Source: Octopus sinensis (taxonomy: Eukaryota). From it: 64,000 bases of DNA. Under the pieces are notes generated by a model. The model saw nothing but the letters and a program-made list of their open reading frames with translations, searched no databases and had not been told where the DNA came from. Within the stretch, counting starts at the first letter, position 1. Each line of letters opens with the position of its first letter. Below are positions 6,401 to 61,929 of the stretch, one piece after another. The stretch lies in contig NC_043010.1 of NCBI RefSeq assembly GCF_006345805.1, positions 28,582,001-28,646,000 of the forward strand, given 5' to 3'. Position numbers and translations under genes: made by a program.

Positions 6401-6780
6401 CAGCAGCCTGGTTCCCTCCTTGTTGCGGGAACCATAACCATAGCCTCCATGTACACCATGGAAGCCCCCAGCATGTCGTCCAACGTGACCATTGAAGTCA
6501 CCAGCCACAAAGAGAAGGTCTCTGTCGTTCGTCAACGAGGTAGTCTGCTGTAGGGTGTCATAGAATCGGTCTTTCTGCCCATCGGGTAGCCCCAGCTGAG
6601 GGGCATAGGCCGATATAATGGTTGCTAATCCACGATGAAGCACTAATCTAATCTTAAATATTCTGTCACGTACTCTATTTACCTCTATTACCTTATCTAC
6701 CCATTTTTCAGCGAGAAGTATACCCATGCCCCCAACACCGTCAGTGTTTCCTGCCCAGAAAATCTTGTACCTGTGTTCTT
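3477..6780 (-). mobile_element. RTE-clade non-LTR retrotransposon, 5'-truncated and frameshifted (APE endonuclease + RT)
   Basis: APE motifs GDFNGHVG, SQIDYIL, HRLVVSDF (6077-6727); RT motifs YRGIKLL, QFGFMPGKSTTDAI, AFVDMEKAFD, HQGSVLSPLLF, LLYADDL; RTE C-terminus RWYGHVARM..RGRPRKSW; 3' UTR repeats and (GAT)n tail. Confidence 0.93.
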
Positions 6781-8258: not shown

Positions 8259-11200
8259 GAGGTTGTTAGGGTATGTGATAGAATGCTTAAGCTCAGGTTA
8301 GTCCTTCAGAACAGCACAGCTATAATTATTTCTGCCTACACCACACAAGCGGGCCTACCAAATGATCAGAAGGACCATTTTTGATACTCTTCTACAGGCT
8401 ACCTCAAAGACATATGGCAATGACCTCATCTTTGTGACCAGGGATTTGAATGGGCATGTTGGGCAGCAGTCTGGTGTCTCACTGGTATATACGGGGTTCA
8501 TGGTATTCGTTCCCGAAAAGATGAGGGAACTAGGCTACTGGAGTTCTGTGATGCATGTAACCTTTTAATCTACAACTCTAACTTCAGGAAGCCAGACAAT
8601 CACCTAATAACCTATCAATCAGGTGACTCCGCTAGTCAGATTGATTTCATCCTCACCAGACAGTGGAGCGCAGGGTTTATCTAAAATACAAAGACCTTCC
8701 CAGGTGAAGAATGTACCCCCAGCATAGACTAGTCATTAATGACTTTAGACTCAAGGCCAGAAGGATTCCAAGAAGCAGACCAATCCAGAAAAGAAGGTTT
8801 TGGAAGCTAAAGAACCCTTCACATGATCAGAGATTTAGGGACATCCTCATCAAGAAATTTGATGAGAGGGAGGAGGAGCTACAGACCTTTGAGATAGAGG
8901 GAAACTGGAAATTCCTACGGGACAGCTTACTGTGTGCTACAGACCAAGTCTGCAGATGGTGCAAAGTCCCTTCCAGACCTAGAGTCACGTGGTGGTGGAA
9001 TAATATGGTAGGCAAAGCCATTAGAACAAAGAAACAGGCCTGGAAAGCCTGGAAGGGTGGGGGTAGCAGGGAACTGTACCAGGTAGCCAAAAGGGAGGCT
9101 GGGCGGCAGGTATACATAGCCAAGGACAAAGCAGAAAAGAAGTTTACCAATGTCCAGCAATGTGAGGACCAAAGAACTGAGGTATTTCGGATTGCAAGAC
9201 AGTGTGTGAGAGAAAATTGTGATGTCACAGGAGAGAAATGTGTCCGCATGGATGATGGTGCACTTGCTTTTAATGATTTGGAAAAGAAAGAGGCTTGGAG
9301 AAGCCACTATGAAAGACTGCTGAACATGGACAATGAATGGGAGGAGGATAGCCTGCCAAATGTTGACTCAGTAGAGGGACCAGCTATCTGAATAGATAGC
9401 ACCCTGGTAGATAAAGTAATTAAGGGTATGAAGCCAGGAAAAGCCCCTGGCCCATCAAGAATCACTGTTGAGGTGCTTAAAACATCTGGTGGCATGGGCT
9501 ATGGCTTAGTCACCCACATTGTAAACCAAGTAATTCATGATGTAGTCATACCCAATGACTAGCGTAGCAGCACCATAGTCAACTGCTACAAGGGTAAAGG
9601 TGATGCTTTAGATAGAAATAACTACAGGGGTATCAAACTGCTGGATCAGGTGATGAAAGTCACGGAGAGGGTTATAGCCCAACTAATTTGGGAGAGAGCC
9701 AGTTTAGATGAGATGCAGTTTGGGTTCGTGCCAGGGAAAAGCACCACTGATGCTATATTTCTGGTATGGTAACTGCAGGAAAAATACCTAGCCAAAGATA
9801 AACCCCTATACTTGGTTTTTGTGGACTTAGAGAAATCCTTTGACAGGGTCCCACAATCTCTTATCTGGTAGGCAATGTGGAAACTGAGGATTGATGAATG
9901 GTTTGTAAGGGCTGTACAGGCCCTATACAGAGATGCTGTGAGTAAGGTTAGGGTTGGCAATGAGTATAGTGAAGAATTCCGGGTAAAAGTAGGGATCCAC
10001 TAAGGATCAACCCATATCCCCTTCTTATTCATCATAGTCCACCAGGCAATAACAGAGGAATTCAAGACAGGATGCCCCTAGGAGCTCCTCTATGCTGATG
10101 ACCTGGCCCTCAGCTGAATCACTACCAGAACTAAAGAAGAAACTAGGTGTGGAAGCAAGGTTTAGAATCAATGTTGCAAAGACCAAAGTTCTAGTAAGTA
10201 GGAAGGTGAACGCATCACACACCCCTTCAGGTAGGTAGCCCTGCTCGATCTGTAGAAAAGGTATAGGTAGAAACTCCATAAGATGTACCCAGTGTAAGGT
10301 ATGGACACATAAGAGATACAGGGAGATTAACCGGAAACCTAGCTTTCATGTACAGCAGATGCACAGGGGCAATAAACACCACAGATGCTCAGAAAACATT
10401 CCATCACATGCCCAGAAGACAATCTAGAAGTAGTTGGTAGCTTCTGCTACCTAGGTGACCAAGTCTGTAGTAGAGGTAGATACTCAGAGGGTGTTACCAC
10501 TAGAATAAGAATAGCCTGGACAAAGTTCAGAAAGCTTCTACCCCTACTGGTGACAAAGGGCTTCTTGCTCAGAGTGAAAGGTAGATTGTACGATGCATAT
10601 GTGTGAACTGCCATGCTCCACAGCAGTGAAACATGGGCTGTGACTGCTGAAAACATGCGTAGGCTTGAGAGGAATGAAGCTAGCATGATCCGCTGGATTT
10701 GTAATGTCAGTGTGTACACATGACAGAGTGTAAGCACCCCGAGAGAAATATTGGACATAAGAAGCATTGGATGTGGTGTGCAAGAGAGACGTTTGCATTA
10801 GTATGGTCATGTACTATGGATGGATGAGGAGAGATGTGTGAAGAAGTGCCACTCTCAAACAGTGGAAGGAATCCAAGATAGAGAGATACCCAGGAAGACA
10901 TGGGGTGAGGTGGTGAAGCATGATCTTCGAACGTTGGGCCTCACAGAGGCAATGACAAAAGACTGAGACGTCACAGAGGCAAGGACAAAAGACTGAGACC
11001 ACTGAAGATATGCTGTGACTAAGAAGACCCGGCAAATAAAGTGAATTCATGCACCAGTGTCGCATAAACAGCCCCCTCAAAAGTACATTGGCTCATCAGG
11101 CGACATGCCATGCATGAGGGGACCTATTGAGTCAAGTACATCAAAATCAAATGGATATTGAAGTTGTGGTCCCCATGCCGGTGGCACGTAAAAAGCACCG

Positions 11201-14008: not shown

Positions 14009-15087
14009 ATCATCATCATCATCATCATCATTTAACGTCCGCTTTCCATGCTAGCATGGGTTGGATGATTTGACTGAGGTGTGGCGAACCAGTCTCCAAT
14101 CTGATCTGGCAGAGTTTCTACAGCTGGATGCCCTTCCTAATGCCAACCACTCCGAGAGTGTAGTGGGTGCTTTTACATGCAACCAGCACGAGGGCCAATT
14201 TGGTGCTACTAGCAACAGCCACATCCAAAAGGTGCTTTGGCGACGTCCTCGCTCGAATGTTTCACATGCCACTACCACAAGTGCTAGTAAAGTGACGCAG
14301 TAATGATCACGCTTGAATTGTGTGCTTAACGTGCCATCAGCACGAAGGCCAGTTTGTTGCTCTGGCAACGATCTCACTCGTATGGTACTCTTAGCGCTCC
14401 ACTAGCAACGGATGCCAGTCACCGAGTTTAGTGTACAATGAAGAAAAGGCACGCATAAGTGGACTGGTTAAACCTCTAGCATAAGCCACAAGGTTATGGT
14501 CACGCTTGCGCTTGCCGAGTCTTCTGCAGCACAGCATATTTCCAGATGTCTCGGTCACTAGTCATTACCTTGGTGAGGCCCAATGTTTGAAGGTCATGCT
14601 TCACCACCTCATCCCAGGTTTTCCTGGGTCTACCTCTTCCACAGGTTCCCTCAACTGCTAGGGTGTGGCACTTTTTCACATAGCTATCCACATCCATTCT
14701 CGCCACATGACCACACCAGCGCAGTTGTCTCTCTTGTACACCACACCTGATGCTTCTTAGGTCCAACCTTTCTCTCAGGGTACTAACACTCTTTTGAGTA
14801 TGCACACTGACATTACACATCCACCGGAGCATGCTAGCTTCATTCCTTGCGAGCTTACGCATATCCTCAGCAGTCACGGCCCATGTTTCACTGCCATGTA
14901 GCATGGCTGTTCGTACACATGCGTCATACAGTCTACCTTTTACTCTGAGCGAGATGCCTTTTGTCACCAGCAGAGGTAATAGCTCTCTGAACTTAGCCCA
15001 AGCTATTCTTATTCTAGCAGCTACACTTTCAGTGCACCTTCCTCTGCTACTGATTTGGTCATCTAGGTAATGGAAGCTATCAACTAC

Positions 15088-15092
<5 letters not shown>
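14009..15092 (-). mobile_element. RTE LINE 3' portion (5'-truncated)
   Basis: [37 protein letters not shown], then degenerate 3' UTR repeats and (GAT)n tail. Confidence 0.92.
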
Positions 15093-15158
<66 letters not shown>

Positions 15159-15394
15159 AAATATGTATACATGTGTATGCATATATATATATGTATGTAT
15201 GTATATTATATATGTATGTATAAATATGTATACATATGTGTATGCATATATATATGTTTGCATATATATATGTATACATATGTGTATGCATATATATATT
15301 TGTATATATATGTGTATGCATATATATATGTATATATATGTGTATATAAGTATATGTATATATATGTGTGTATATATATATTATATATGTATGT

Positions 15395-17592: not shown

Positions 17593-18367
17593 ATCATCAT
17601 CATCATCATTTAGCATCCGTTCTCCATGCTAGCATGGGTTGGACGGTTCAACTGGGGTCTGTGAAGCTGGAAGGCTTCATCAGGCCCAGTCAGATCTGGC
17701 AGTGTTTCTACGGCTGGATGCCCTTCCTAACGCCAACCACTCCGTGAGTGTAGTGGGTGCTTTTTACGTGCCACCTGCACAGGTGCCAGACAGAGCTGGC
17801 AAACGGCCACGAACGGATGGTGCTTTTACGTGTCACCGGCACGGGGGCCAGGCGAGGCTGGCAACGGGCACGAACGGATGGTGCTTTTACGTGTCACCGG
17901 CACGGGGGCCAGGCGAGGCTGGCAACGGAGACGAACGGATGGTGCTTTTACATGTCACCGACATGGGGGCCAGACAGGGCTGGCAAACGGCCACGAACGG
18001 ATGGTGCTTTTACGTGTCACCGGCACGGGGGCCAGACAGAGCTGGCAAACGGCCACAAACGGATGGTACTTTTACGTGTCACCGGCACGGGGGCCAGGCC
18101 AGGCTGGCAACGAACACGAACGGATGGTGCTTTTACGTGCCACCTACACGGGGGCCAGACAGGGCTGGCGAACGGCTACGAACGGATGGTACTTTTACGT
18201 GTCACCTGCACGGGGGCCCTGATGTTGATCGACCTCAATTTGGTTTGATCTTGATTTTGACTGTTCTCACTGGTCTTGCCGGGTTTTCTCACGCACAGCA
18301 TACCTCCAAAGGTCTCGGTCACTGGTCATTTCCTTGGTGAGACCTAAAGTTCGAAGGTCGTGCTTCA
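17593..18367 (-). mobile_element. RTE 3' end with expanded array of about 61-62-bp units (7 full + 1 partial)
   Basis: (GAT)n tail at 17593; units start ggtgcttttacgtg at about 17756, 17819, 17880, 17941, 18003, 18064, 18126, 18188. Confidence 0.9.
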
Positions 18368-18846: not shown

Positions 18847-20406
18847 TTGCTATGGTTCCAACCCCCTCCATTTGATAGATCGGTACCTCCAATGCTTCGA
18901 TTGGTCATCACGCGGGACGAAGTCAAACGTGTTATTCAAGGCCTCGATGTCAACAAGGGTCACGGCCCTGACGGCATACACCCATGGGTTATCAAAGCGT
19001 TGGCTCCGGTCATCTGCGAGCCCTTAACACGTCTATTCAATATGTCATTGGCGACGGGTGTTATACCTGCGGACTGGAGAACAGCGATAATCTGCCCAAT
19101 TTTCAAGAAAGGGAGCTGCGAAGACCCGCTTAACTACCGACCGGTTTCCCTTACATCAATAATCAGCAAGATGTTCGAAACCATCCTTAAGAAAAGTATG
19201 ATGCTCCACCTCCAAAACACAGCCTCTATCTCTGATTCCCAACACGGCTTCGTGCCGAAGAGATCATGCTTGACCAATTTACTGGTAATGGAAGAATTGG
19301 TGACGCGCATCCTTGATGATAGTGATGCTGTTGACATCGTTTTATTGGACTTTGCCAAAGCTTTTGACTCGGTAAACCACCGCCTATTACTTGTCAAGCT
19401 TCAAGCATATAGTTTCCATCCGGATATTGTACGATGGGTTGGTGCCTTCCTCTCAGATCGCTCCTTCCAAGTTCAAGTTGATGGTTTGCGGTCCGACGTC
19501 TCCAGTGCAAGCAGTGGCGTGCCTCAAGGTTCAGTGCTTGGGCCCTTATTGTTCTTAGTCTTCATAAATGACTTGCCCGACGACCTCACGCAACACACCA
19601 TTCTATTTGCCGACGATGTCAAACTGGTCGCTCCTCGCGGTGATATAGAGGATCTTCATCGATGCCTCCACCAAATTTGGAGGTGGTCTAACGAATGGGA
19701 CCTGTGTCTGAACGTGTCAAAGTGCTGTCATCTGCCTGTTGGCTCTCCTCCTGCAACTCAACTTGATTTCAAGCCGGGTCGTCTGCTGCTGGAGAGGACC
19801 GATCAGGTAAAGGACCTGGGTATCTTGGTGGATTCCTCCTTTTCGCCTTCGGCCCAGTGCGTCCATGCTGCCAACAAAGCACGCGGAATTCTGTTCTTGA
19901 TTCGACGGTCATTCGGAATGCTCACAGCAGCCATATTCCTACCACTCTATGTCACGCTGGTGAGACCCATATTGGAGTACGGAATTCAAGCCTCTTCTCC
20001 TTATCTCCTCAAAGACATACAGCATCTCGAAAGAGTCCAGAAGCTGGCTACCCGCATGGTTCATGGTCTCAAAAATTTTTCCTATGAAGAAAGGCTGAGG
20101 ACGCTCGACCTTTATTCTCTAGAAAAACACCGCCGCCGTGGTGATCTCATTCTCGCCCACAACATCATAAGTGGAAAGTGTAACCTCTCGAAAGAGCTGT
20201 TCTTCACTCCTGCTTCAGAGCGTCGGCTGCGGGGTCATTCCGAAAAGCTCTACCTGCGACGATTTCATCTCAATCGAAGGAGAGGAGCTTTCTCCGTCCG
20301 GGTTGCGGATCCGTGGAACAAGCTGCCAGACGAGATGGTGAAGATGCCGACGACCGCTTTGTTCAAAGCCTCACTTGACCTCAAGTGGCCTGAACTCTTT
20401 ACATGA
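18847..20406 (+). CDS. Reverse transcriptase (ORF2, 5'-truncated) of a CR1-clade LINE, 519 aa without stops
   Basis: GPDGIHP, NYRPVSLTS, QHGFVPKRSCLTNLL, DFAKAFDSV, GVPQGSVLGPLLF, FADDVKL, LERVQKLATR, RRGDLI; the first few codons come from the Tc1 flank. Confidence 0.93.
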   Translation: MLWFQPPPFDRSVPPMLRLVITRDEVKRVIQGLDVNKGHGPDGIHPWVIKALAPVICEPLTRLFNMSLATGVIPADWRTAIICPIFKKGSCEDPLNYRPVSLTSIISKMFETILKKSMMLHLQNTASISDSQHGFVPKRSCLTNLLVMEELVTRILDDSDAVDIVLLDFAKAFDSVNHRLLLVKLQAYSFHPDIVRWVGAFLSDRSFQVQVDGLRSDVSSASSGVPQGSVLGPLLFLVFINDLPDDLTQHTILFADDVKLVAPRGDIEDLHRCLHQIWRWSNEWDLCLNVSKCCHLPVGSPPATQLDFKPGRLLLERTDQVKDLGILVDSSFSPSAQCVHAANKARGILFLIRRSFGMLTAAIFLPLYVTLVRPILEYGIQASSPYLLKDIQHLERVQKLATRMVHGLKNFSYEERLRTLDLYSLEKHRRRGDLILAHNIISGKCNLSKELFFTPASERRLRGHSEKLYLRRFHLNRRRGAFSVRVADPWNKLPDEMVKMPTTALFKASLDLKWPELFT

Positions 20407-30873: not shown

Positions 30874-32760
30874 TCTCAACTACTCCAAGGATGTTTAGTT
30901 TGCATTTGTTAAAGTTGTTAGCCATCTGCAGATATTTCTCTTTTTCCTTAAGCATTCTTACATTAAGTGTTCCAATTTTCAGGTACTTTTTACTGTTCAT
31001 AAGTTTCATTCCTCTGTTCTTGCCATCAGCTACTTCCAGTTGGATTTAAAGAAGTACTTTCATCAGTCTTTATGTGACTTGCTTGAACATCTGGAATGTC
31101 TGAGTCAGGGGCTCTAACCCTGGTGCTGTTAATGTGTGGATTCATAGGGGTTTCAGTTGCGCATATTATAGGAGTCATAGGGCGCTGCTCCATGTGGTCC
31201 TGCAACACAACTACCCAGCCCCATCCGAGCAACTCCATTTATGCCTTTTAACACCTCATGTGTGGATTCATAGGGGTTTCAGTTGCGCATATTATAGGAG
31301 TCATAGGGCGCTGCTCCATGTGGTCCTGCAACACAACTACCCAGCCCCATCCGAGCAACTCCATTTATGCCTTTTAACACCTCTTATACTCTGAACCTTC
31401 TAAAATGTCTACATCATCCTCTTCCAACAATTTTTCATATGTTAAAAGGTCTGGTAGTCTGTTCCAATCATATCCACTTTCATGCCTTGCCAACCTCACC
31501 TTTTGTTCCTCTGTGGTTACCACACATTGGTGCCACCTCTTAACATTGTCATACCCCTCTGTTTCCACTTTTTTCCACTCTTCCCATGTCATTACCTCCT
31601 TACATAATTCCTCATTTGTATCATCATACATTATTACAGTACATTTTTTTCTTTTCTGCCTGGCTGGAGTTTGAGGGGGTTTGTGTGTACTTTTCTTTTT
31701 CTTTTGTTTTTGTGTCGGAGGGGAATGGGTAGGCTTGATGCCTGTTGGGGATGGTGGGTCTGAGAGGGTGTGGGTTGGGGTTTAGAGTTCAAAACACTTG
31801 CCTTCTTTCTCTTTCTTCTGGTGACTTTTCCCACCTGTCCTCCATTGCCACTACTTCCTCCTCCTTTCTGGAACTCCCCAACCTCTCTTCCTTTTGCTCC
31901 TCCATATTCTTTAGTTGCTTCTCCTCTGCTTTTTTGGTCTGTGAAGGGCAGTCTGCTCTAATGTGGCCCTTTAGGCCACATTTAAAGCATCTGGGGGCTC
32001 TGCTCTCCACCCTGACTGTCATCACGTCATCCATAATTATTGACTCTGTGATATTTTCCAGAGTCTCAGTTGAACAATCAGGTTCAGTGTTTGTCCCTTC
32101 CATATTAGGCTTTCCTTTTTTGTAGCCTGGAGAACCACTATGTTGTCTTCGTTTCCAAGAAGGAAGCATCTGCTACCCAGGCCACATCAATCTCTGGTGG
32201 AATTCCTTCTATGCTGATTCTTGTTGCTCTTAGTCCTTGGTAAGTGGGCAGAAGCTTTTGATGGATGTCGCTGCTTGTTTCCTTGCTGTTGCCGTGCCCT
32301 TGAACCTCACCTCCACTACTCCAAACATTGAACCTCTTGCGAGGTACACGATATCACTCCATATCGGTCTCAGAGCCTTTTCCATCTGGTCCATAGTCAC
32401 AATGTCAATTTTCCCATCACTTATCAAAAGGTTCAGTACATTATTGTCCTTTCCTTAATATTATTACGTTCGGGGGGGGGGGGCAGCTTCACCTTAAAAC
32501 CATCCAGACTTAATAAATCTGTATACCTTCCAAATTTTCCCATATCCATTTCCTTCTCCTGGCATTTTGCTGCATCAGCAAAATTCTTCTTCTTCAATTG
32601 ATCGTCCATCTTTCGGACCACCTCCAACAATTCCTCTTCCAATGACAATATGTCTGAGAAGCTATAGTCTTCTACAGACATGTTTTTACTAAGCTTTCTC
32701 TCCTCTCATGAGAACAGAAAGCACAAACAAACAAACCGCTGCAAAGCAGCACAACATATT
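30874..32760 (-). mobile_element. 5' half of a two-ORF LINE: decayed ORF1 with CCHC knuckle, inter-ORF repeat, start of ORF2 endonuclease
   Basis: RCFKCGLKGHIRADC (CX2CX4HX4C); ORF2 start MKLMNSKKYLKIGTLNVRMLK..LNILGVVE (31009 to 30874) matches APE motif I. Confidence 0.72.
31132..31383. repeat. Identical 126-bp tandem duplication
   Basis: 31132-31257 equals 31258-31383. Confidence 0.92.
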
Positions 32761-38655: not shown

Positions 38656-39900
38656 CAGGGTGTGTAAGATATTTGAGGACAGATTTATGTTTACAAAAAA
38701 AAAACAGATATAGAATAACAAATATTTATTTATTTATGCTATGAAGATAGAAATAAACTTCCTTTTCTATAATGTTATTCAATAAAGCCACCTTCAGCTT
38801 CACAACTGCTTCTATATGAGATCTAAATCATCTACATGCTCAAATCAAGTGGTCCTGGTTCATTTTGGACATTACTCTGACTGTGGCAGCTTTCAAAGAT
38901 CTTTGGTGTTATGGGCATGTTCATTGACCTCTCTCTCAACAATGCTCCATGCGTAATAGTCCAGTGGATTGAGATCTTGGGAATTAGGAGGCCAAATGTT
39001 AGGGGTTATGTGATCATGAAAATTTTTAGCCATCCGTTCCTGTGTTACTAGAGCCAGGTGTGATAGTGCAGTCTTACTGAAACACATATGGCCTTCCATT
39101 GCATACACTGTCTATTCAGGGCTTAACAATTATTTGCAGGACCTCAATGTAGGTGGCAGAGTTAACTCTAAGGCCTTGTGGAAAGAAGTAAGGAGGCATC
39201 AGATGTCCTTTATTGCTGACAATCTCTAAAACTATGACAGTTGCAAGAAATTTTGTATGCATAACACTTGAAACTTAAGAAGGGTCTGCACATAACCATT
39301 TCTTCTGTTAACTTTTTGATCTTGGTCAAAAGTTTTTCTCATTTGAGAAAAACCAAATCAAATCTGGATTTTTCAGTTTGTTTAAGAGCCTTTTAGATTT
39401 GATGTAATGATTTTCCTTTTGCTTTTTCTGACAAATTGACCTTTCCTCATCATATATCTGATGTCTTCATGGACAACATTTCTGACTGTTCCTTCTGACA
39501 CATGGAGATCTTTTGCAATTGATCTCATGGAATTTCTAGGATTGTAATCAATGGTCTGTTGAACTTGCTGGATAAATTCAGGTGTTCTGATGATTTCAGA
39601 GCATTTAGAATGCTTTTTATGCTTTGATACTGGTGATACATTTCCATCTTCAGTCTCTAGCTCCTTACAGACTTTGTAGTCGAAAGATCTGGCAACTTTT
39701 AAAAGTCGAGGTATTTCTAAATCACTATGCTCAGCCTTTATAATCACAATGACAGCATACCTCTTCATTTCTTGAGTAAGCTGAGGACCCCTTTAAAGCT
39801 GTTATGTTTAAAAACACAGCATACCTCAAAGAATCTCTCTCACTTCTGGGGCAATTTTTTGTTTCACCTAGCTTTGAGATATTCTGATTTTTATACATAA
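38656..39900 (-). mobile_element. maT-like (DD37D) transposon remnant with internal deletion
   Basis: N-terminal HTH region KRYAVIV..SMRSIAKDLHVSEGTVRNVVHEDI (39382-39768); WPPNSQDLNPLDYYAW (38893-39108); end cagggtg at 38656. Confidence 0.8.
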
Positions 39901-40721: not shown

Positions 40722-43240
40722 ACTTCAGGAAAATAAAAAGGAAATTGCCACCATAAATATTTTCATAAACTGAACCAATAAGCATAAGTTTTTAGAAGGA
40801 AAACAAGGCAAAAATACACACTGCTGTCTGTGTAATTGACTACGAAAAACCAATCTGATGTTCGAAATATTTAGTTATCGTCAGTGGAGATCAGTATTAA
40901 TGTGTGTCTGTAGATATATAAGTATATAAATGTAAAAAGACACAGGTACACACACACACACACACACACACTCACACAAATATCTAGATAGACAGATAGA
41001 TAGATAGATAGATATTGTTGGAAGTTAAGTTGGTAAATAACTAGAGACAGTTATATAGATAAATAATGTATAAATATAATATATAGATAGCATTGACACC
41101 AATATATCTAGAAATTAGTAGTTAGAAAGATAGATGAATAAACAGGTTAAGAGACAGATTTAGGTTGAAAAATTTAAGCTGATAAAATATATATTTATCA
41201 ACATCAACAGATGTCTAGGGATGAAGGGTGATAGATATAAAACTGTGACTGTAAATGTATAATCTGCTGTTTTACTGATATTACTATAATGCATACTCAC
41301 AGCTTATTATGAGAGAAGGGAGAAAAAATAATAATATATAAAAAAAAAATTAATATTTTATTAAAAGTGTTAAGTCAAATTCATGAGTGCGTGACTGCAT
41401 ACATGGTGCAATGTTTTTATCATTTTACAAGGACATTTTGGCTGCAATGTACCTGTTAATTGCAGGATAAGGTCAACAGCAACAGACATAATTTACACTC
41501 AATGAACCACAGTTCTGGAGTATCTCATATGTAACTAATCTAAACTACATTTAAGCAAGTAATAGTGTTAGATGTAGCAGCAGCAGTAGTAGTATAGCCA
41601 AAACTAGATATTTTATAGAACACAACTGGAAGGTATTTGTGAATTGAATCCATAATTAGTTTGTGATTGTTTCACTTCACTTCTATTTGGTTGCTAATGC
41701 CTTTCATAGTATTAACATTGCACTGTTTCATTCCCTGATCTCTGTAAATCTGAGATATGTGAATAATTAGGAAGTTATTGTTGTTGTTATTATTTATAGT
41801 AGTGTTGTGGTTGATGGCATAGCACAGCAATGAATACTTGTTTTCTAACTTTGCCTACTTTATTAAAGCCCTTAAGAAAGGTATGAACAACACGATATCA
41901 CCTTCCATATTCTCTTCTCTACATGTTTAAGACATCATGTTTAATTAAGAAAATTCTTTCATCATTAGATCGCCACCATCATCATCATCATCATTATTAT
42001 TATTATTATTATCTTTATTATTATTATTATTCTCTAAGAATTTGTGTAAATGTGTGAATTTGCAGAAGCTGTCAACCCATGGCTATAGTGTGGAGAAAAC
42101 AAATGTAAAAACAGGAATATATAAATGGAAATAAAACATTACAGTTGTTAACTGTAGGGTCAATAAAATTGCAAAATAAACGCCCTACTGTCATTGTTGT
42201 TACCATCATCATCATCATCAACAGTAACATCATCATCAATCAGAACTGGCTTAGCTATTTTTTTCCAGTCATCTGATGTAAACTTGTTGCACTCAAACTC
42301 ACTTGCTACCCCTCTTTTTTCCTCACAAGCAATCTCACTCATACTCAAATGTAAAAGTCACACAGTTACCTGTGTGACTTTTACATACTTATTCATATAG
42401 ACTGATCCATAGAACATTTTCATTGTAAAGACATATTCATACTGCACAATCTCCTGCTCATACACATGTGAAGAATACACAAACAGACTCTCTCTTACAC
42501 TACAGACTCAATGATATAAACACCAGTCTCTGAAAAGAAGATTTCATTACATTTAACCCTGATTACCCAAATTCTTCAGTCTATGAGGACATGAAAAGCT
42601 ACAAGTATTTCCCTACTTATTTTAGACTAACAGTTAAAGAGGAAAAAAACAAGACAGTAGAAAGAAACAGCTACCCATAGTTTCAGTTTGGAGAAAATTA
42701 TTTCACAAATTATTTCTGTAAATATCAATTCTTCATAGACATATATATCTAATCAACAGGGTTGATGGATATATCCACTTGATTTCGTTGGTAATTACAA
42801 GTCAGGTGACACACTATTGGCGCAACAACAATGTTGATATTTAGTAATTGATGGAAGGTGGTGGCTCTTCTCATGTTTGCATTGCACAGAAGTTGGAGAC
42901 CAGTTCTCATCATTTATATCATCTATTAAAAATAATCTGTTGTAACTTCTACAATCCTTAATTATTTAAAAATATTAATTTGATATTATTGTGTTAAGTT
43001 AAAGGAGTGGGGGCAGGCAGGTCACATCGAACTCATCCTTTTCAATTTGCTATCTCATTCATATCATAGACATCAGAAAACATAAATACACACACACACA
43101 CACACACACATACACCCATGCAGAGAAATTGAGAGAGAGAGAATGGAAAGTTAACAGAAAAATAAGTAATGAAACCAATATTTATGAGCCCAAATGATTT
43201 ATTCATAAAGTAGGGCATGATTTTTCTAGTTTCTGTTGTA

Positions 43241-44007: not shown

Positions 44008-45480
44008 ATGGAAAAATCTTTCACATGTGAAATTTGTCAAAAGACATTCACCCGTCGGTCAAACTTGACCCGACATGTCTCAAACTGTCATAGAGACAGA
44101 GAAGTAGTGGAAAAATCAGAGAACAATGTCAGAATGGAAGAAACCAACGATGTCAGCTTGAGCAACAGCCCAATGGGTGTATTTTCCTGTAACATATGCC
44201 TACAAGGCTTTACTTTGAACTCTCAACTTCAAGCTCATGCTCGGGAACATGAGGCAGAAAGTGGTGTCAGTAGTGAGAACATAAACTCAGTTGTTAATAC
44301 TGATACAAAAAGTGATGAAGTCAGTTCTAGTGTCGAGAGTCTTGGCATGGTGAACCCTTGTATTGTGAACCCTTCTATTAGCCCAATTATTACTGCTGAT
44401 AACAATAATTTGAATAATGTTGGTCCTGATGTTGCTTCTTCAGAAGTTGTTGTTACCACAGATGTGTTAAATCATGATGTCACTTCTCCAGTTATGGTTG
44501 TCAATGGTGTTGTACGTGGTGATACTGCTGTTACTCCCAATCTAATCAACGAAACTATAAACACCACCACCACCTCCACCACTGTCTCAGCTATATCTTC
44601 CTCACCATCTCTTTTGGTTCGTCACTCAAGTCCTTACTCCTGCTCCATTTGTCAACGAGGCTTCTCCCAGCGATCACATCTTGACGCACATGTTCGCATA
44701 CACTCGGGAGAGCGGCCCTACCAGTGTAACCAGTGCGGGGCAGCCTTCTCTCGAAGAGGTAACTTGGTGCGTCATCGGCTGTCTCATGGAGGTGAACGAA
44801 AACACAAGTGTACTGTGTGTGGACGGAGATTCTCGCAAAAGTCACATCTTCAAGTCCATTTACGGATACACACTGGTGAACGACCTTACAAGTGTGACCG
44901 TTGTGGTTATGCCTTTTCTCGCAATGGTAATCTCGTCCGGCATCGACGAGCCAACAGCAGCGGCAAGCGTAAATACAGTTGTGTACCTCCCACATTACTG
45001 TCAACATCAAGTGGACAACAGTCAACATCAAACACATCTTCATCACAAGCTGCTCTCATATCCATGTGCCAAAATAATTTGGCACAGACACAAATACAAA
45101 CTAAAAATGTGGTGAGTGGTTCAAGTCAGAAGGGAGTGAAGACCCATGTTAGTAACAGTGCTGAAGGCAAGAATGCAGCAGCCTTACATCAGCAACAATT
45201 ACTGCAAACCACCTCCAATACAACTACCACTACTGCAGTGGTAGCAACAGCACCAACTGCTGCAAGTACCAATGTGGTTCAATTAGCAAATGTCCCCTAT
45301 CAAATAATGACAGCTCTTCCAAGTCCCCTAAATGCCATTCAGCCAGTGACTAGTTACCACTCCCTGGCTAATGTCCCCCATCAGCTAGTCACTGTTCCAC
45401 AACCAATTAGTGTCCACCAACTGGCCAGTCTAGGTAATATTGCCAGCATCCCTCTTCACATTGATGTACCAACAACTTAA
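44008..45480 (+). CDS. C2H2 zinc-finger protein, 490 aa: two isolated N-terminal fingers, four tandem fingers, Q/T/S-rich C-terminus
   Basis: Long stop-free ORF in unique sequence; CX2CX12HX3-4H motifs with SGERP/GGERK/TGERP linkers; the last finger lacks the canonical second His. Confidence 0.93.
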   Translation: MEKSFTCEICQKTFTRRSNLTRHVSNCHRDREVVEKSENNVRMEETNDVSLSNSPMGVFSCNICLQGFTLNSQLQAHAREHEAESGVSSENINSVVNTDTKSDEVSSSVESLGMVNPCIVNPSISPIITADNNNLNNVGPDVASSEVVVTTDVLNHDVTSPVMVVNGVVRGDTAVTPNLINETINTTTTSTTVSAISSSPSLLVRHSSPYSCSICQRGFSQRSHLDAHVRIHSGERPYQCNQCGAAFSRRGNLVRHRLSHGGERKHKCTVCGRRFSQKSHLQVHLRIHTGERPYKCDRCGYAFSRNGNLVRHRRANSSGKRKYSCVPPTLLSTSSGQQSTSNTSSSQAALISMCQNNLAQTQIQTKNVVSGSSQKGVKTHVSNSAEGKNAAALHQQQLLQTTSNTTTTTAVVATAPTAASTNVVQLANVPYQIMTALPSPLNAIQPVTSYHSLANVPHQLVTVPQPISVHQLASLGNIASIPLHIDVPTT

Positions 45481-47262: not shown

Positions 47263-49540
47263 TATATATATGCACACACTTTTTCTAACTTAGAGGATGT
47301 AAAACTGCTGTCTCTTTAATTTCTCTCCTGTCTGAAAAGTTAGATTTTCTACTCCCCATGGCAAGTTTTACTGTATTCTATCAATTTTACAAAATACTAC
47401 AATTCTTGCCAATGCAGACCAACTGCAGTCTCTTTGGAGTCTGATGGTATATATCTGTGTGTACAATGAATTTAAATACTGCAATAAATTTTAAGTAGTT
47501 AGGAGAAAGAAAAGTGGTTTGGCAAAACTAGTAAAAATTTCATTTCTGTTCAATTTATGATTTTGTTCAAAACCTTTGACTACTCTTCATCCTTTCAACA
47601 TCAAATTTTTACTTTTGTTTGAATTATTTGTATTACTCTTTGCTGACAGTACTGCACTAATTTTTTGAGATTCTGTTTTCTAACATATATATACAAGTTT
47701 ACATCAATATGTGTATATGACGAAAAAAATGTTAAAATTTGATGATATATATATACTTCTATTGTATTATATTTATAATACATCTGATACAAGTGTCATA
47801 TTACGTACACATGTATATATTAACAGTCTCATTTGATTGAGGGTTTCTTTTCAACTCACTGTGTAACATATGTGAAACCTGACCATATACATGTGTCTGT
47901 TGCCTAGAGACATCATCAAGTATATTTCCTCAAACTTTATATATGTATACATCAGTTAATAAAAGTCTCTCACTGATTGCTTTATAAAATATTTTACAAC
48001 AGTAAAATCCAGTTTTGGGCCAAATTTCCTTGTGTTTGGAAATTTATGACAAGAAACAATCAATATGTGAGTATAAAATTCATCATAATGGCAAAATTTT
48101 GAGTTTTTTTTTTTCTTTTGACAGAAATCAATTGTGAATGATGTATTTTTATTTTTACTTATATAAAAAAATAGCCAAAACAATGCTTGCTATATATATA
48201 TATACATACACACACACTCATACTCACACTCACATGTGCACAGACACATGCATAAATTGGTCAGTTGCACATAGATGGCTGATGAAATGGTCTGGTTATA
48301 TGGTTATATAATAAGATAATGTAATACATCATTGAACAAATAAAAAAAACATTCTATGGAAACGACAGTAATGCAGCATGAACAGTGTCTCTATTCCCAT
48401 TGTTTTATTTTATATATGTGTGTGTGAGAGAGAGAGAGCGAGAGTTAAAAGCTTCTTTATTGGTAGAGAATTGATGTGGGGTAAAATAAACAAGTTAAGT
48501 TAGAAAATATGTAAATGTTTACAAAGGTAGAAATCAGAGTAGTGATGGTGGTGGCAGCAGTGAAATCTATTTCATTCAATTCAGTAAACTTTCTTTATCA
48601 CAAGAAACATAAAATGAGCTATAAAACAGCTCATCCAATCAGTTATGCCACATTTTCAAGACCTTTGCTTTTATGAACATCTAATTTGTACATGCCATAG
48701 AAAATATGAAATTTATACATTGCACATACAAAACATGATATATGTACATTACAAATACAAAACTATTTCCATGTAATCACCATTGAAATTAACTTTTTTT
48801 TTTTTAATATTTAAGAAGACTTTTAAAAACTCTTTTTTCACTATCTTTGTAAAATTTCATGAATTTGTAACCATTGGCCATTTACAGTTTTGCAATGTTT
48901 GTGTCAATGTCTATCTGCTGATACAATAATACGTACACACACACATATACACACATGTATTATATATGCCTTGTAGAGTAGAAGATCTTTGGTAAGACAA
49001 ACTTGTGAGAAGTTTACACTCCTGGTTCATGTAATTTCACTTCAATGAAATCACTAAATGCCCTAAAAACTGAATGAATATTACAACACTCAATAAAATT
49101 ATATGTATGAAGTACATATATATATAAATATATACATATACACACACACATAAATAACATGCATAAATATCTATTGATAATCATGTTTTAATTCAACTTT
49201 TTACATTTCAAATATATTTTTATCTGTATAATACACACATACATATTTACAATTGTACATACATATTTATAATTATGCATACATTTGTGTCTGTATATGT
49301 ATATAAATATATATATATATATATATACACATACACATATAGGTGCATAAACATCTTATTTGCTTCTGTTAGGTATGCATACAATCGGCATTTAATTTCT
49401 GACTAGAGTCTATTTGCAATATTTAAATGAGATATGCACTAAAAACAACAAAAAATTACACCAACATTCACACTGAATACAAACCACACACACACATTTA
49501 TATATACATACATTTATAAATATATATATATATATATATA

Positions 49541-51017: not shown

Positions 51018-51312
51018 TATATATATATATGTATGTATATTTATATATTTATACATGTATGTATACTTTTTATCAAAGTCAATAAAATTTTCACAAACCG
51101 TTAATCAGAGTTCCACATTACCATTTGTTAGACAGTTTTGATTACAACTATCTGACAAATCGCAATATGAAACGTTGAGTAACAGTTTGTGAAAAATTTT
51201 TCAGCTTGAATAAAAAACATATTACTCTACCTTTGGTATTCAAGTACTGTTTTTTTTTTCCATCTTGTTTTGCATTTATGTGCTTACTTGTGCGTATATA
51301 TATAAATATATG

Positions 51313-51347
<35 letters not shown>

Positions 51348-51575: not shown

Positions 51576-52119
51576 TTAAATAAAAAATGTCATTCATTTC
51601 TTTTTTTGTCATTTATCTAAATATGTATGTGTATACACACAACACTCATATAGATATGTACATACATATATTGGCATTAGGAAGGGCACCCAGCCATAGG
51701 AGCCGTGCCCAAACTGACAGTAGAGCATGATACAGTCCTTAGACCCATTGGATTGTGCCATACAGTCTAACTCATTCCAGCATGGAACATGGATGTTATA
51801 TAATACAATGTATATGCATGTATATATTTATGTATGTATATGTATAACCTGCTAGAAATAGTAGCTCAATCACCTGTCTAATTTAAATAACAAAAAATTA
51901 TTTAGATAGTGCTGTCCTGGATACCCCTAAAAATACAGCATCACCATGTTTCTTTGATCATATGGAATCTGCACAATCACAGCTGACATAGGGCTAAACA
52001 TCAGCTACACACTGTTATCACATACACAGAGTCAAATATACTCAACCATTGGGCAATTAATTGAATTGATATCCATGGCTCTCTCTCCCTCTCTCTCAAT
52101 CTATCTCTTTCTCAATATC

Positions 52120-55152: not shown

Positions 55153-56532
55153 CATCATCATCATCATCATCATCATTTAGTGTCCGCTTTCCATGCTAGC
55201 ATGGGTTGGACGGTTCAACTGGGGTCTGTGAAGCCAGAAGGCTGCATCAGGCCCAGTCTGATCTGGCAGTGTTTCTACAGCTGGATGCCCTTCCTAACGC
55301 CAACCACTCCGTGAGTGTAGTGGGTGCTTTTTACGTGCGACCCGCACAGGTGCCAGACGGAGCTGGCAAACGGCCACGGACGGATGGTGCTTTTTATGTG
55401 CCACCGGCACGGGGGCCAGGCAAGGCTAGCAACGGCCACGAACAGATGGTGCTTTTTACGTGCCACCGGCATGGGGGCCAGGCGAGGCTGGCAACGGCCA
55501 CGAACGGATGGTGCTTTTTACGTGCCACTGGCACGAGGTCAGTCTGGGCGGCGCTGGCAACGGCCACGAATGGATGGTGCTTTTTACGTGCCACTGGCAC
55601 GAGGCCAGTCTGGGCGGCACTGGCAATGGCCACATTTGGATGGTTCTCTTACGTTCCACTGGCACTGGTAACTCAGCTGCAATTTCCATTGATCAATTTC
55701 GATTCTGATTCTAACTAGCCTCAACAGGTCTTCACAAGTAGAGTTTTGTGTCCCAAGAAGGGAAGGTGTGCATAAGTGGGTTGGCTACATCCCATGTAGA
55801 AGGCCATGGGTTATGGTCTCACTTGTCCTGCCGGGTCTTCTCGTGCACAGCATATTTCCAGAGGTCTCGGTCTCTAGCCATTTCCTCAGTGAGACCTAAA
55901 GTTCGAAGGTCGTGCTTCACCACCTCATCCCAGGTTTTCCTGGGTCTGCCTCTTCCACAGGTTCCCTCAACCGCTAGGGTGTGGCACTTTTTCACACAAC
56001 TATCTTCATCCATTCTCGCCACATGCCCATACCAGTGCAAACGTCTTTCTTGCACACCACATCTGATGCTTCTTAGGTCCAGCTTTTCAGTATGACTACT
56101 GACATTACACATCCATCGGAGCATACTGGCTTCATTTCTTGCGAGCTTACGCATATCCTCAGCAGTCACGGCCCATGTTTCACTGCCATGTAGCATGGCT
56201 GTTCGTACACACGCGTCATACAGTCTGCCTTTTACTCTGAGCGAGAGGCCTTTTGTCACCAGCAGAGGTAAGAGCTCTCTGAACTTTGCTCAAGCTATTC
56301 TTACTCTAGCAGTTACACTTTCAGCACACCCGCCCCCGCTGCTGACTTGGTCACCTAGGTAACGGAAGCTATCAACTATTTCTAGTTTTTCTCCCTGGAA
56401 AGTGACAGAAGTTGGTCTCAGAGCATTTTCAGTGTTTATTGTTCCTGAGCATCTGCCACATACAAAAACTATCTTCCTAGTTAGCCTTCCTTTGACATTG
56501 CTGCACCTCTTATGTGTCCATAGCTTACACTT
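55151..56532 (-). mobile_element. RTE LINE 3' portion with 6 UTR repeat units
   Basis: [37 protein letters not shown]; (GAT)n tail; TA arrays on both sides. Confidence 0.92.
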
Positions 56533-60295: not shown

Positions 60296-61929
60296 TATAA
60301 GTGTGTATGTGTAAGAGGTAATGGTTGGAAGAAAACGAAGTGGTAGAATGGAGGAAAAAGAGAGAGAGAGAGAGAGAATAAAGATAGAAAAGATAGGCAG
60401 AGAGAAAATAACAGTGTTCACTAGAGTATCTAACATTAAGGAAGAGGAGAATAAAAAGAAAAGGAAAAAATAAGGAAGAGATACACACTAAGGCTGTACT
60501 TATAAATGCTGTTCTTAGGCTTTTATAACCACAATTCTAATAAACTATAATGCTTACAGGTTTTAATTAGTTTTGTAAATAATTAAGAATTGAACAGGAT
60601 TTAGTAAAATTAATTACTTTTTTTTTATTAAGTTGTTCAAAGGGAATGTTAATCATATTGATCTCAGCAATTTTGCAGGGGCTGAGGAGACCAGTTACAG
60701 CTCCTTCCTCTACTTACACCACTCAAAAAAAATATTTTGAAGCTAACAAGACATTTTACATGAAAATTATGAGGCAATGTTTTACTTTGATTGTAACTTC
60801 TTTAAAAGGAGAAGGCTTTTATGATAATCAGATGAGTTAGTTTCCTTGTCATGTATTTTATATTTTTTTCTAAGGAACAAGGAGTGGATAATATATATAT
60901 ATATATATATATATATGTCAACCTCAACAGGGATCTTCTTTGCCCATCTCTTTGCCAGCTTCTAGAGCCAGAGGTGGTTTTCACAGCTGAATGCTTTGCT
61001 TTAATATAGACCACTCAACCATGAAGTGGGATTGGTAAATATTTTCTTTCTTTTTTCAACTTCATTGATGAGGCAAGTGGAATTATTGCCTCCCCAAAAG
61101 ACACAGATTAATACCTTTGTCAAGTTTTGAATTCAACTCCTGCAGACCAGCACCATAGTCATTTCAGCCATTGTGCAGAATATACCCAATTCAGGTTGTT
61201 ATATTATTTATAAGTGCAAACATTGTATTAAATATTTCAGCATGGATAATTGTATATACTGTCTATAACATTTAAATATGATTTGAGCATTATATTTTAA
61301 ATGCAGCTTGCACTGTTAAGACATACCCTTCATCAGCTGTTGATTAGATATAACAATTTCAGCATCTATAAGCTACATCACTGCTTCAAGTATTAATGAG
61401 CAGTACTTGATGCTACCAGAGAATGTCTGAGTTATTTTGCTCCTCACTTCAGAATGGTCTATTCCCTTCCTCTTATCCATGCATCTACTAAAATCACTTT
61501 TAATAACTCCAATTGCTGAAAATGACAATATTTGGGGTCAAATTTCAAATTTTTACTGGCATGTCAATGGTAATGCTATCATCTAAATATCAAACTTATT
61601 TCTTTTTCTCTGGACAAAAGTTATAATTAACTATTTGCAACATAGAGATACAGTTAAGGTATGTTATACATTCACTGCAATATTGGTCCAGATACCAATA
61701 TTACTCGCAATACCAGAGGGCGCACACTCTCCTACCCTGATGTAATCTCCAGGGATACAGGCATCCAACAACAAGACTCCTGTAATGCTATGATGGACCA
61801 TAAAGTCTGGTGTAGCATGGTAAATTCCATTGTCTCGACCACGGTCAAACAATGATGATTGGTCCAGAATGTGGAATAAAATGTCGATCTGGTACTGCAT
61901 GTCTATTAATTGTTTCTGCATGTGTTTAC

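What the first reader, a model, noticed from the sequence alone, without database searches (positions are those of the whole stretch)
44635..44950. Zinc-finger array predicted to read (GA)n: candidate cephalopod GAGA-factor/CLAMP analogue
Seen: the four tandem fingers have helices (-1 to +6) QRSHLDA, RRGNLVR, QKSHLQV, RNGNLVR, a strict A-B-A-B alternation; isolated finger 1 is RRSNLTR. Established: in the modular recognition code R-1/N3/R6 (RSDNLVR type) specifies GAG, and Q-1/H3 with A or V at 6 (QLAHLRA type) specifies AGA. Inference: read antiparallel, the array predicts GAG-AGA-GAG-AGA = (GA)6. The layout (separate N-terminal fingers, central array, Q/T/S-rich low-complexity tail) loosely recalls Drosophila CLAMP. 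A dedicated GA-microsatellite reader in such a microsatellite-rich genome could be an undescribed chromatin regulator.
Basis: partly seen in the sequence, partly recalled or inferred. Interest (0 to 1): 0.78.

Follow-up and report, generated by a model that had tools for sequence, protein, structure and literature searches.

The report
Octopus zinc-finger gene, predicted GA-rich reader
This is a real, conserved but unstudied cephalopod zinc-finger transcription-factor gene whose four DNA-reading fingers are predicted to prefer a GA-rich 12-base site; it is not related to the insect GA-binding proteins, and no binding has been shown.

Summary
Window 44008-45480 (+) is one 490-aa ORF with six C2H2 fingers. 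The four tandem fingers (44635-44955) have helices QRSHLDA, RRGNLVR, QKSHLQV and RNGNLVR. This A-B-A-B pattern is not chance: in 1809 four-finger windows from 233 unrelated zinc-finger proteins it recurred only in an octopus paralogue.

The gene is annotated but uncharacterised in Octopus sinensis, O. vulgaris and O. bimaculoides, and has cuttlefish-type orthologues. The array is under strong purifying selection (pN 0.10, pS 0.79). The conserved C-terminal tail has no relatives outside cephalopods.

By the modular recognition code the array reads 5'-GAG nGA GAG nGA-3'. (GA)6 is the best single guess, but two of the twelve bases are not specified.

- Finger 4 lacks its second histidine.
- The Octopus N-terminal finger (RRSNLTR) is absent from decapods.
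- Position +6 of array finger 1 is Ala in Octopus and Thr in decapods.
- One decapod shows Asn/Ser variation at a predicted base contact.
- GA repeats are the rarest AT-containing dinucleotide repeat in this window.

It is not a member of the CLAMP, GAF or ThPOK families. My verdict is a new member of a known kind, with a plausible but untested GA-rich specificity.

The parts
44008..45480 (+). Complete coding sequence (490 aa plus stop) of an uncharacterised C2H2 zinc-finger protein, in one coding exon
   Evidence: ORF listed. The identical protein is called in O. sinensis CM016872.1 and O. vulgaris OX597827.1. It is 97% identical to O. bimaculoides XP_052828751.1. Pfam zf-C2H2 E = 2e-33.
44020..44091 (+). 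N-terminal finger N1 (aa 5-28, helix RRSNLTR, ends HVSNCH); found only in the Octopus lineage
   Evidence: It is absent from the decapod ORFs and from 1.25 kb upstream of them in all frames.
44182..44250 (+). Finger N2 (aa 59-81, helix LNSQLQA). The framework and the following AHAREHEAE are conserved, but the contact positions are not (ESAELEA in decapods)
44635..44703 (+). Array finger A1, helix QRSHLDA (class A, predicted nGA); QRSHLET in decapods
   Evidence: Aligned with the Aart QLAHLRA (AGA) finger.
44719..44787 (+). Array finger A2, helix RRGNLVR (class B, predicted GAG). The Asn+3 codon AAC is at 44761-44763
   Evidence: The helix is invariant in the orthologues, except for an AAC/AGC (Asn/Ser) variation in one decapod species.
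44803..44871 (+). Array finger A3, helix QKSHLQV (class A, predicted nGA)
   Evidence: helix identical in all orthologues.
44887..44982 (+). Array finger A4, helix RNGNLVR (class B, predicted GAG). It has Cys2-His only (HRRAN) and is followed by the conserved basic stretch GKRKYSC, whose Cys lies 13 residues after the His
   Evidence: AlphaFold2 predicts a normal beta-beta-alpha finger here, with pLDDT about 82-85.
44983..45267 (+). Low-complexity S/T/Q/A-rich region (aa 326-420), poorly conserved
   Evidence: 54% S+T+Q+N. It diverges between octopus and decapods.
45268..45477 (+). Conserved 70-aa C-terminal motif (NVPYQIM...NVPHQLVTVPQ.IS.H.L...PLHID.PTT), a presumed effector or partner-binding region
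   Evidence: 39 of 70 columns are invariant between octopus and decapods. pN 0.25 against pS 0.76. An exhaustive profile search of 1.84 billion representative proteins found only the cephalopod cluster.
43131..43142 (+). Nearest match to the predicted site (GAGAGAGAGAGA), 877 bp upstream of the start codon and next to an (AC)n tract. It is a candidate target only
   Evidence: Other matches lie at 48424-48443, 51311-51332 (-), 52080-52097 (-) and 60358-60377. No evidence of binding.

Best explanation
The locus encodes a nuclear, sequence-specific DNA-binding transcription factor of the classical C2H2 type that is restricted, as far as could be detected, to coleoid cephalopods.

Its four canonically linked fingers would wrap the major groove and read about 12 bp antiparallel. 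The class-B fingers (Arg-1, Asn+3, Arg+6) each read GAG. The class-A fingers (Gln-1, His+3, small residue at +6) each read nGA. The predicted site is therefore 5'-GAG nGA GAG nGA-3', which short (GA)n tracts satisfy. In this genome sequence almost all matches are such tracts.

The S/T/Q-rich region and the conserved C-terminal 70-aa motif would recruit partners.

Shown:
- the gene exists,
- its residues are as reported,
- it is conserved,
- the pattern is not random,
- the array has the fold of DNA-bound finger arrays.

Inferred: the DNA site itself, nuclear function, and any effect on chromatin or transcription.
For: - Finger residues and Pfam match.
- Canonical-length linkers (SGERPY, GGERKH, TGERPY) are conserved.
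- AlphaFold2 gives four beta-beta-alpha fingers. The best PDB fold matches are all DNA-bound C2H2 arrays, with Aart 2I13 first.
- Module equivalences QLAHLRA = AGA and RSDNLVR = GAG: PMC7317221 Table 1.
- A1 aligns with the Aart QLAHLRA finger.
- The GAGA-factor finger QSRNLRR shares Asn+3 and Arg+6.
- ABAB occurs in 1 of 1809 background four-finger windows, and that one is the paralogue.
- Array pN 0.098 against saturated pS 0.79 between octopus and a decapod.
- The helices are identical in 10 orthologous sequences except at +5/+6 of A1 and one Asn/Ser site.
- GAGNGAGAGNGA occurs 13 times at 5 loci in the window against 0.05 expected, always inside GA-rich tracts.
Against: - No binding experiment or trained specificity predictor could be run.
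- Recognition-code predictions for natural arrays are often only partly right (general knowledge).
- The 5' base of both class-A triplets is unspecified, because +6 is Ala or Val in Octopus and Thr in decapods.
- The Arg-1 residues lack the buttressing Asp+2 of the RSDNLVR module; Gly is at +2.
- Finger A4 lacks its fourth zinc ligand at the normal place, so it may be weakened or may use the Cys 13 residues downstream.
- One decapod carries Ser instead of Asn at +3 of A2 in 5 of 9 runs. That would break a perfect GA reading.
- Four fingers may bind a specific GA-rich promoter element rather than repeats.
Confidence: 0.55

Rival explanations
1. It is a dedicated GA-microsatellite chromatin factor, a functional analogue of Drosophila GAF or CLAMP. 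It would tile on (GA)n tracts genome-wide and open or organise chromatin.
For: - The predicted site is satisfied in any register of (GA)n with n of 6 or more, and ABAB alternation is the arrangement needed to read a dinucleotide repeat.
- All 13 window matches lie in GA tracts.
- The array is deeply conserved.
- It has a Q/S/T-rich region, as GAF and CLAMP do.
- The GAF finger shares Asn+3 and Arg+6.
Against: - There is no homology or shared architecture with CLAMP (six tandem fingers; PMC4945028) or with GAF and ThPOK (BTB domain absent).
- GA repeats are few and short in this window. There are 3-4 loci of at most 18 bp, against 121 AT loci.
- The two 5' bases are unspecified.
- The Asn/Ser variant and the Thr+6 in decapods argue against strict selection for a pure repeat.
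- Nothing bears on chromatin function.
Confidence: 0.15
2. It is an ordinary gene-specific transcription factor whose real motif differs from the code prediction. It might use only 2-3 fingers, or a composite site together with N2, and the ABAB pattern would be merely the trace of an old internal duplication of a two-finger unit.
For: - A1/A3 and A2/A4 resemble each other in framework as well as in contacts (13 and 15 of 23 residues; 52 and 47 of 84 nt), as expected after a tandem duplication.
- The paralogue P0042 carries three copies of the same four-finger cassette, with variation at contact positions (QYGNMLR, NMNDLER).
- Finger 4 is degenerate.
Against: - The contact residues have stayed identical while synonymous sites saturated. 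They are therefore under selection themselves, and the residue types involved (Arg, Asn, His, Gln) are the most reliable in the code.
Confidence: 0.25
3. It is one of the lineage-specific, transposon-targeting zinc-finger genes of the cephalopod C2H2 expansions, comparable to vertebrate KRAB zinc-finger proteins.
For: - Cephalopods have very large C2H2 expansions whose targets are unknown (PMC12513265).
- Database names such as 'SCAN domain-containing' and 'KRAB' were attached to this protein and its cuttlefish orthologue.
- The window is full of retroelement fragments.
Against: - No KRAB or SCAN domain is present, so the names were given by similarity only.
- It has only 4+2 fingers.
- It has orthologues with a near-identical array in both octopus and decapod lineages, which is the opposite of fast-evolving arms-race genes.
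- The gene is isolated, not in a tandem zinc-finger cluster within the 64 kb.
Confidence: 0.05

Closest known systems
Designed polydactyl zinc-finger modules (Barbas GNN/ANN set; Aart, PDB 2I13)
   Same: Same fold and linker geometry. Aart is the best sequence and fold match among solved structures. A1 and A3 share Gln-1, His+3 and a small residue at +6 with the AGA module QLAHLRA. A2 and A4 share Arg-1, Asn+3 and Arg+6 with the GAG module RSDNLVR.
   Different: This is a natural protein. Residues +1, +2 and +5 differ. There is no Asp+2 to buttress Arg-1. The last finger lacks its second His. The specificity is untested.
Drosophila GAGA factor (Trl/GAF), PDB 1YUI/1YUJ
   Same: A C2H2 finger with Asn+3 and Arg+6 (helix QSRNLRR), which reads GAG within GAGAG (established knowledge). 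It also has a Gln-rich region.
   Different: GAF has a single finger flanked by basic regions, plus a BTB/POZ domain. Here there are four tandem fingers and no BTB. No orthology.
Drosophila CLAMP (CG1832)
   Same: A C2H2 protein with a separate N-terminal finger, a tandem C-terminal array and a low-complexity region. It binds long GA-rich sites (PMC4945028).
   Different: CLAMP has six tandem fingers. Its Gln-rich region precedes the array. It is described as highly conserved in insects, with no strong mammalian homologues. Here there are four fingers, the low-complexity region follows the array, and the tail is found only in cephalopods. Its N1 counterpart is not even conserved in decapods.
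Vertebrate ZBTB7 family (ZBTB7A/LRF, ZBTB7B/ThPOK)
   Same: A four-finger array aligns over its whole length (about 39-40% identity). From my own knowledge, not tested here: the last ZBTB7 finger also ends atypically.
   Different: ZBTB7 proteins have an N-terminal BTB domain and different contact residues. No BTB here.
Octopus vulgaris paralogue P0042 ('finger 665-like', 687 aa)
   Same: The only other protein found with the ABAB cassette (QRSHVSV/RLQNLER/QRSHLKA/RNGNLAR). Its C-terminal cassette ends the same way as this protein (HRRGN...GKRWSC).
   Different: It has three cassettes rather than one, no similarity outside the fingers, and no orthologues among the listed hits.

Membership tests
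Classical C2H2 (Krueppel-type) zinc-finger proteins | Repeated C-x2-C-x12-H-x3-5-H units detected by Pfam PF00096 above the curated cut-off | tested here: met
   113.2 bits against a cut-off of 25.2, 6 stretches. Five of the six fingers have all four ligands. A4 has Cys2-His only.
Classical C2H2 (Krueppel-type) zinc-finger proteins | Tandem fingers joined by TGEKP-type linkers of canonical length, with a beta-beta-alpha fold | tested here: met
   Linkers HSGERPY, HGGERKH and HTGERPY. The AlphaFold2 model has four beta-beta-alpha units. Fold matches are DNA-bound arrays.
CLAMP | Six tandem C-terminal fingers forming the DNA-binding domain | tested here: not met
   Four tandem fingers, against 'always six tandem zinc fingers' in PMC4945028.
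CLAMP | Sequence orthology to insect CLAMP, including its conserved N-terminal finger | tested here: inconclusive
CLAMP ZF1 (PDB 7NF9) was not among the best 60 PDB matches of the N-terminal region. The Octopus N1 finger is missing in decapods.
GAGA factor (Trl) and ZBTB/ThPOK | N-terminal BTB/POZ domain | tested here: not met
   No BTB family among the Pfam matches listed at E up to 1 (best 25 of 29 shown).
KRAB or SCAN zinc-finger proteins (names given by source databases) | KRAB (PF01352) or SCAN (PF02023) domain | tested here: not met
   Neither is among the Pfam matches listed (best 25 of 29), nor in the precomputed domain lists for P0001, P0013 and P0020.
GA-repeat or GA-rich DNA readers (functional class) | Demonstrated preferential binding to GA-rich DNA | not testable with these tools
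   Only a recognition-code inference is available.

The most novel reading that the evidence does not exclude
Coleoid cephalopods independently evolved a GAF/CLAMP-like factor. It would be a lineage-restricted four-finger protein, with a paralogue family, whose alternating fingers read (GA)n tracts. In at least one cuttlefish-type species its specificity would be tuned by A-to-I recoding of the base-contacting Asn+3 of finger A2 to Ser.
Probability: 0.08. Interest if true: 0.75.

Novelty: new member of a known kind. Interest (0 to 1): 0.3.

Why it matters
The DNA targets of cephalopod C2H2 proteins are essentially unknown and have been flagged as an open question (PMC12513265). This protein is a tractable entry point. 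It has a short, deeply conserved array with a clear and falsifiable 12-bp prediction. If the prediction holds, it would be a convergent, non-insect example of a GA-element reader, and a handle on how short GA tracts are used in cephalopod gene regulation. If it fails, it is one more uncharacterised zinc-finger gene.

Tried and rejected
- **Tail search by word index.** The search with aa 321-490 returned nothing. It did not even return the 97%-identical O. bimaculoides protein, so I treat that negative as a tool limitation and not as evidence.
- **Exhaustive tail profile search.** This found only the cephalopod cluster plus one irrelevant repeat protein (P0128).
- **Orthologues by the finger array.** This cannot be done with these tools. 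Poly-finger proteins with summed scores fill the 120 listed hits. No non-cephalopod hit covered more than about 66% of the protein.
- **Search with the paralogue P0042.** It gave no close relatives.
- **Literature search for the six exact helices.** No papers.
- **A recollection about CLAMP.** I recalled that CLAMP had first been flagged by a zinc-finger code prediction. PMC3405997 does not bear this out, so I dropped it.
- **RNA or DNA origin of the Asn/Ser variant.** I tried to decide this from contig ends. The contigs break at homopolymer runs, not at poly(A) tails, so it stays undecided. A search for the run accessions in papers found nothing.
- **Predicted sites upstream of the orthologous genes.** No conserved site was found.
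- **Rejected ideas.** KRAB/SCAN membership (the domains are absent), and a pseudogene or chance ORF (the 490-aa ORF is conserved with low pN).

Full report
**What is there.** Window 44008-45480 (+) is a single uninterrupted 490-aa ORF. An in-frame stop lies 13 codons upstream of the ATG.
- The identical protein is called in Octopus sinensis CM016872.1 and O. vulgaris OX597827.1. The positions of flanking GA tracts match the O. sinensis locus.
- The O. bimaculoides protein XP_052828751.1 is 97% identical.
- Source names such as 'zinc finger and SCAN domain-containing protein 2' and, for the cuttlefish orthologue, 'KRAB' are similarity labels. Pfam lists only C2H2-type families, with no SCAN, KRAB or BTB.
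- The gene stands alone among retroelement fragments and TA-rich microsatellites.

| Finger | Helix (-1 to +6) |
|---|---|
| N1 | RRSNLTR |
| N2 | LNSQLQA |
| A1 | QRSHLDA |
| A2 | RRGNLVR |
| A3 | QKSHLQV |
| A4 | RNGNLVR |

The array occupies nt 44635-44955. The alternation extends to the finger frameworks. A1/A3 share 13 of 23 residues and A2/A4 share 15 of 23, against 8-9 of 23 for cross pairs.

As a chance test I classified 3402 fingers from 233 non-orthologous proteins returned by the homology searches. That set is biased towards similarity to the query. 194 fingers are Q-1/H3/small+6 and 15 are R-1/N3/R6. Of 1809 four-finger windows, only one is ABAB, and it belongs to an Octopus paralogue, P0042. 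The pattern is real and specific to this family.

**Conservation.** Decapodiform orthologues are only 52-55% identical overall, but nearly identical in the array. They are P0013 with Sepia pharaonis CAE1243979.1, and P0020 at locus L001.
- Between octopus and L001 the array has pN 0.098, while synonymous sites are saturated (pS 0.79).
- Contact residues are identical in ten orthologous sequences, with two exceptions.
  - A1 is QRSHLDA in Octopus and QRSHLET in decapods.
  - In one decapod species the Asn+3 codon of A2 is AAC in four runs and AGC (Ser) in five. This is the only recurrent difference in 1170 nt, and both forms occur within the same run series. It is either a common SNP or A-to-I recoding. 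Contig ends do not reveal whether the runs are RNA.
- N1 is absent from the decapod ORFs and from 1.25 kb upstream of them.
- N2 keeps its framework but not its contact positions (ESAELEA in decapods), so it is unlikely to read bases.
- A 70-aa C-terminal motif is conserved (39 of 70 columns invariant). An exhaustive profile search of 1.84 billion representatives found it only in the cephalopod cluster.

**Finger 4.** A4 ends LVRH-RRAN, with no second His. This holds in all orthologues, and in the last cassette of the paralogue (HRRGN). In each case a basic stretch and a Cys follow, exactly 13 residues after the His (GKRKYSC, GKRWSC). AlphaFold2 models A4 as a normal beta-beta-alpha unit with pLDDT about 82-85. 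The fourth zinc ligand could be water, Asn or the downstream Cys; this is unknown. From the literature as I recall it (not checked here), fingers lacking the last His can still bind zinc and DNA.

**Predicted specificity.**
- QLAHLRA is used for AGA and RSDNLVR for GAG in PMC7317221 Table 1.
- HMMER aligns A1 with the QLAHLRA finger and A2 with the REDNLHT finger of Aart. Aart is also the best fold match.
- The finger of GAGA factor (PDB 1YUI) has helix QSRNLRR, sharing Asn+3 and Arg+6 with A2 and A4.

By the established contacts (Arg-1 and Arg+6 to G, Asn+3 to A, His+3 to G, Gln-1 to A), and reading antiparallel, the array predicts 5'-GAG nGA GAG nGA-3'. The n positions face Ala, Val or Thr at +6, which give little discrimination. 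In the designed sets Ala and Val were selected for 5'-A and Thr and Ser for 5'-T (the Thr/Ser rule is from my own knowledge). (GA)6 is therefore the best single guess for Octopus, but only 10 of 12 bases are specified. Gly at +2 leaves Arg-1 unbuttressed.

**Genomic sites.** GAGNGAGAGNGA occurs 13 times at five loci in the window, against 0.05 expected. Every match lies in a short GA-rich tract. If the code holds, the practical targets would be short (GA)n tracts, roughly one per 13 kb here. One lies 877 bp upstream of the gene's own ATG, which may mean nothing.

The 'microsatellite-rich genome' argument does not carry over. Loci with at least 6 units number 121 for AT, 24 for AC and 3-4 for AG, and the longest AG tract is 18 bp.

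**Comparison with known systems.** The protein works, by inference, like a designed GAG/AGA polydactyl array and, finger by finger, like the GAF finger. It is not a member of the following families.
- CLAMP has six tandem fingers, a Gln-rich region before the array, and is described as conserved in insects (PMC4945028, PMC9226498).
- GAF and ZBTB7/ThPOK have a BTB domain, which is absent here.
- KRAB and SCAN families require domains that are absent here.

It also differs from the fast-evolving genes of the cephalopod C2H2 expansions described in PMC12513265. It has few fingers, and near-identical orthologous arrays in both octopus and decapod lineages.

**Verdict.** It is weakened by the unspecified 5' bases, the degenerate last finger, the Octopus-only N1 finger, the Asn/Ser variant, and the scarcity of GA repeats in this window.

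The finding is a new member of a known kind: an uncharacterised, cephalopod-restricted C2H2 transcription factor with a predicted GA-rich site. Interest is modest (0.3). It would rise if binding to GA tracts, or RNA-editing control of a contact residue, were shown.

Noticed in passing
Loci L004-L008 versus L017-L020, CDS nt 485 of the 389-aa decapod orthologue (equivalent to window 44762): An A/G difference turns the base-contacting Asn+3 of finger A2 into Ser (RRGNLVR to RRGSLVR). It appears in 5 of 9 sequencing runs of one species, and the CDS is otherwise identical. Both forms occur within the same run series. This fits either a common SNP or A-to-I RNA recoding.
   Followed up: partly
window 44952-44982 (aa 316-325): The last array finger has Asn where the second zinc-binding His should be. 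A conserved basic stretch follows, ending in a Cys 13 residues after the first His. The same ending is found in the last cassette of the paralogue P0042.
   Followed up: partly
P0042 (Octopus vulgaris, same 84.7-Mb chromosome record OX597827.1): A 687-aa paralogue carries three copies of the same four-finger Q..H / R..N..R cassette. No close orthologue appeared among the 120 listed hits, and no exact gene record was found.
   Followed up: partly
window 3637-3851, 17756-18218, 55323-55665: A 62-bp GC-rich tandem repeat (GGTGCTTTTTACGTGCCACCGGCACGGGGGCCAG...) recurs at three places in the window. Each copy lies next to TA microsatellites and retroelement ORFs, so it is probably part of a repeated element.
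   Followed up: no
window 4313-6727 (-), 8711-9391 (+), 14500-15321 (-), 18847-20406 (+), 55819-56259 (-), 39382-39768 (-): Several ORFs look like fragments of non-LTR retrotransposons (reverse transcriptase and endonuclease-like). One looks like the N-terminal part of a Tc1/mariner-type transposase. This is judged by eye from the translations; no family search was run.
   Followed up: no
L001 1429-1440: The gene call for P0020 reads through the true TGA stop (...PTTWILD). The protein really ends at PTT, like its orthologues.
   Followed up: yes
window 31132-31383: A perfect 126-bp tandem duplication (2.0 copies, 100% identity).
   Followed up: no
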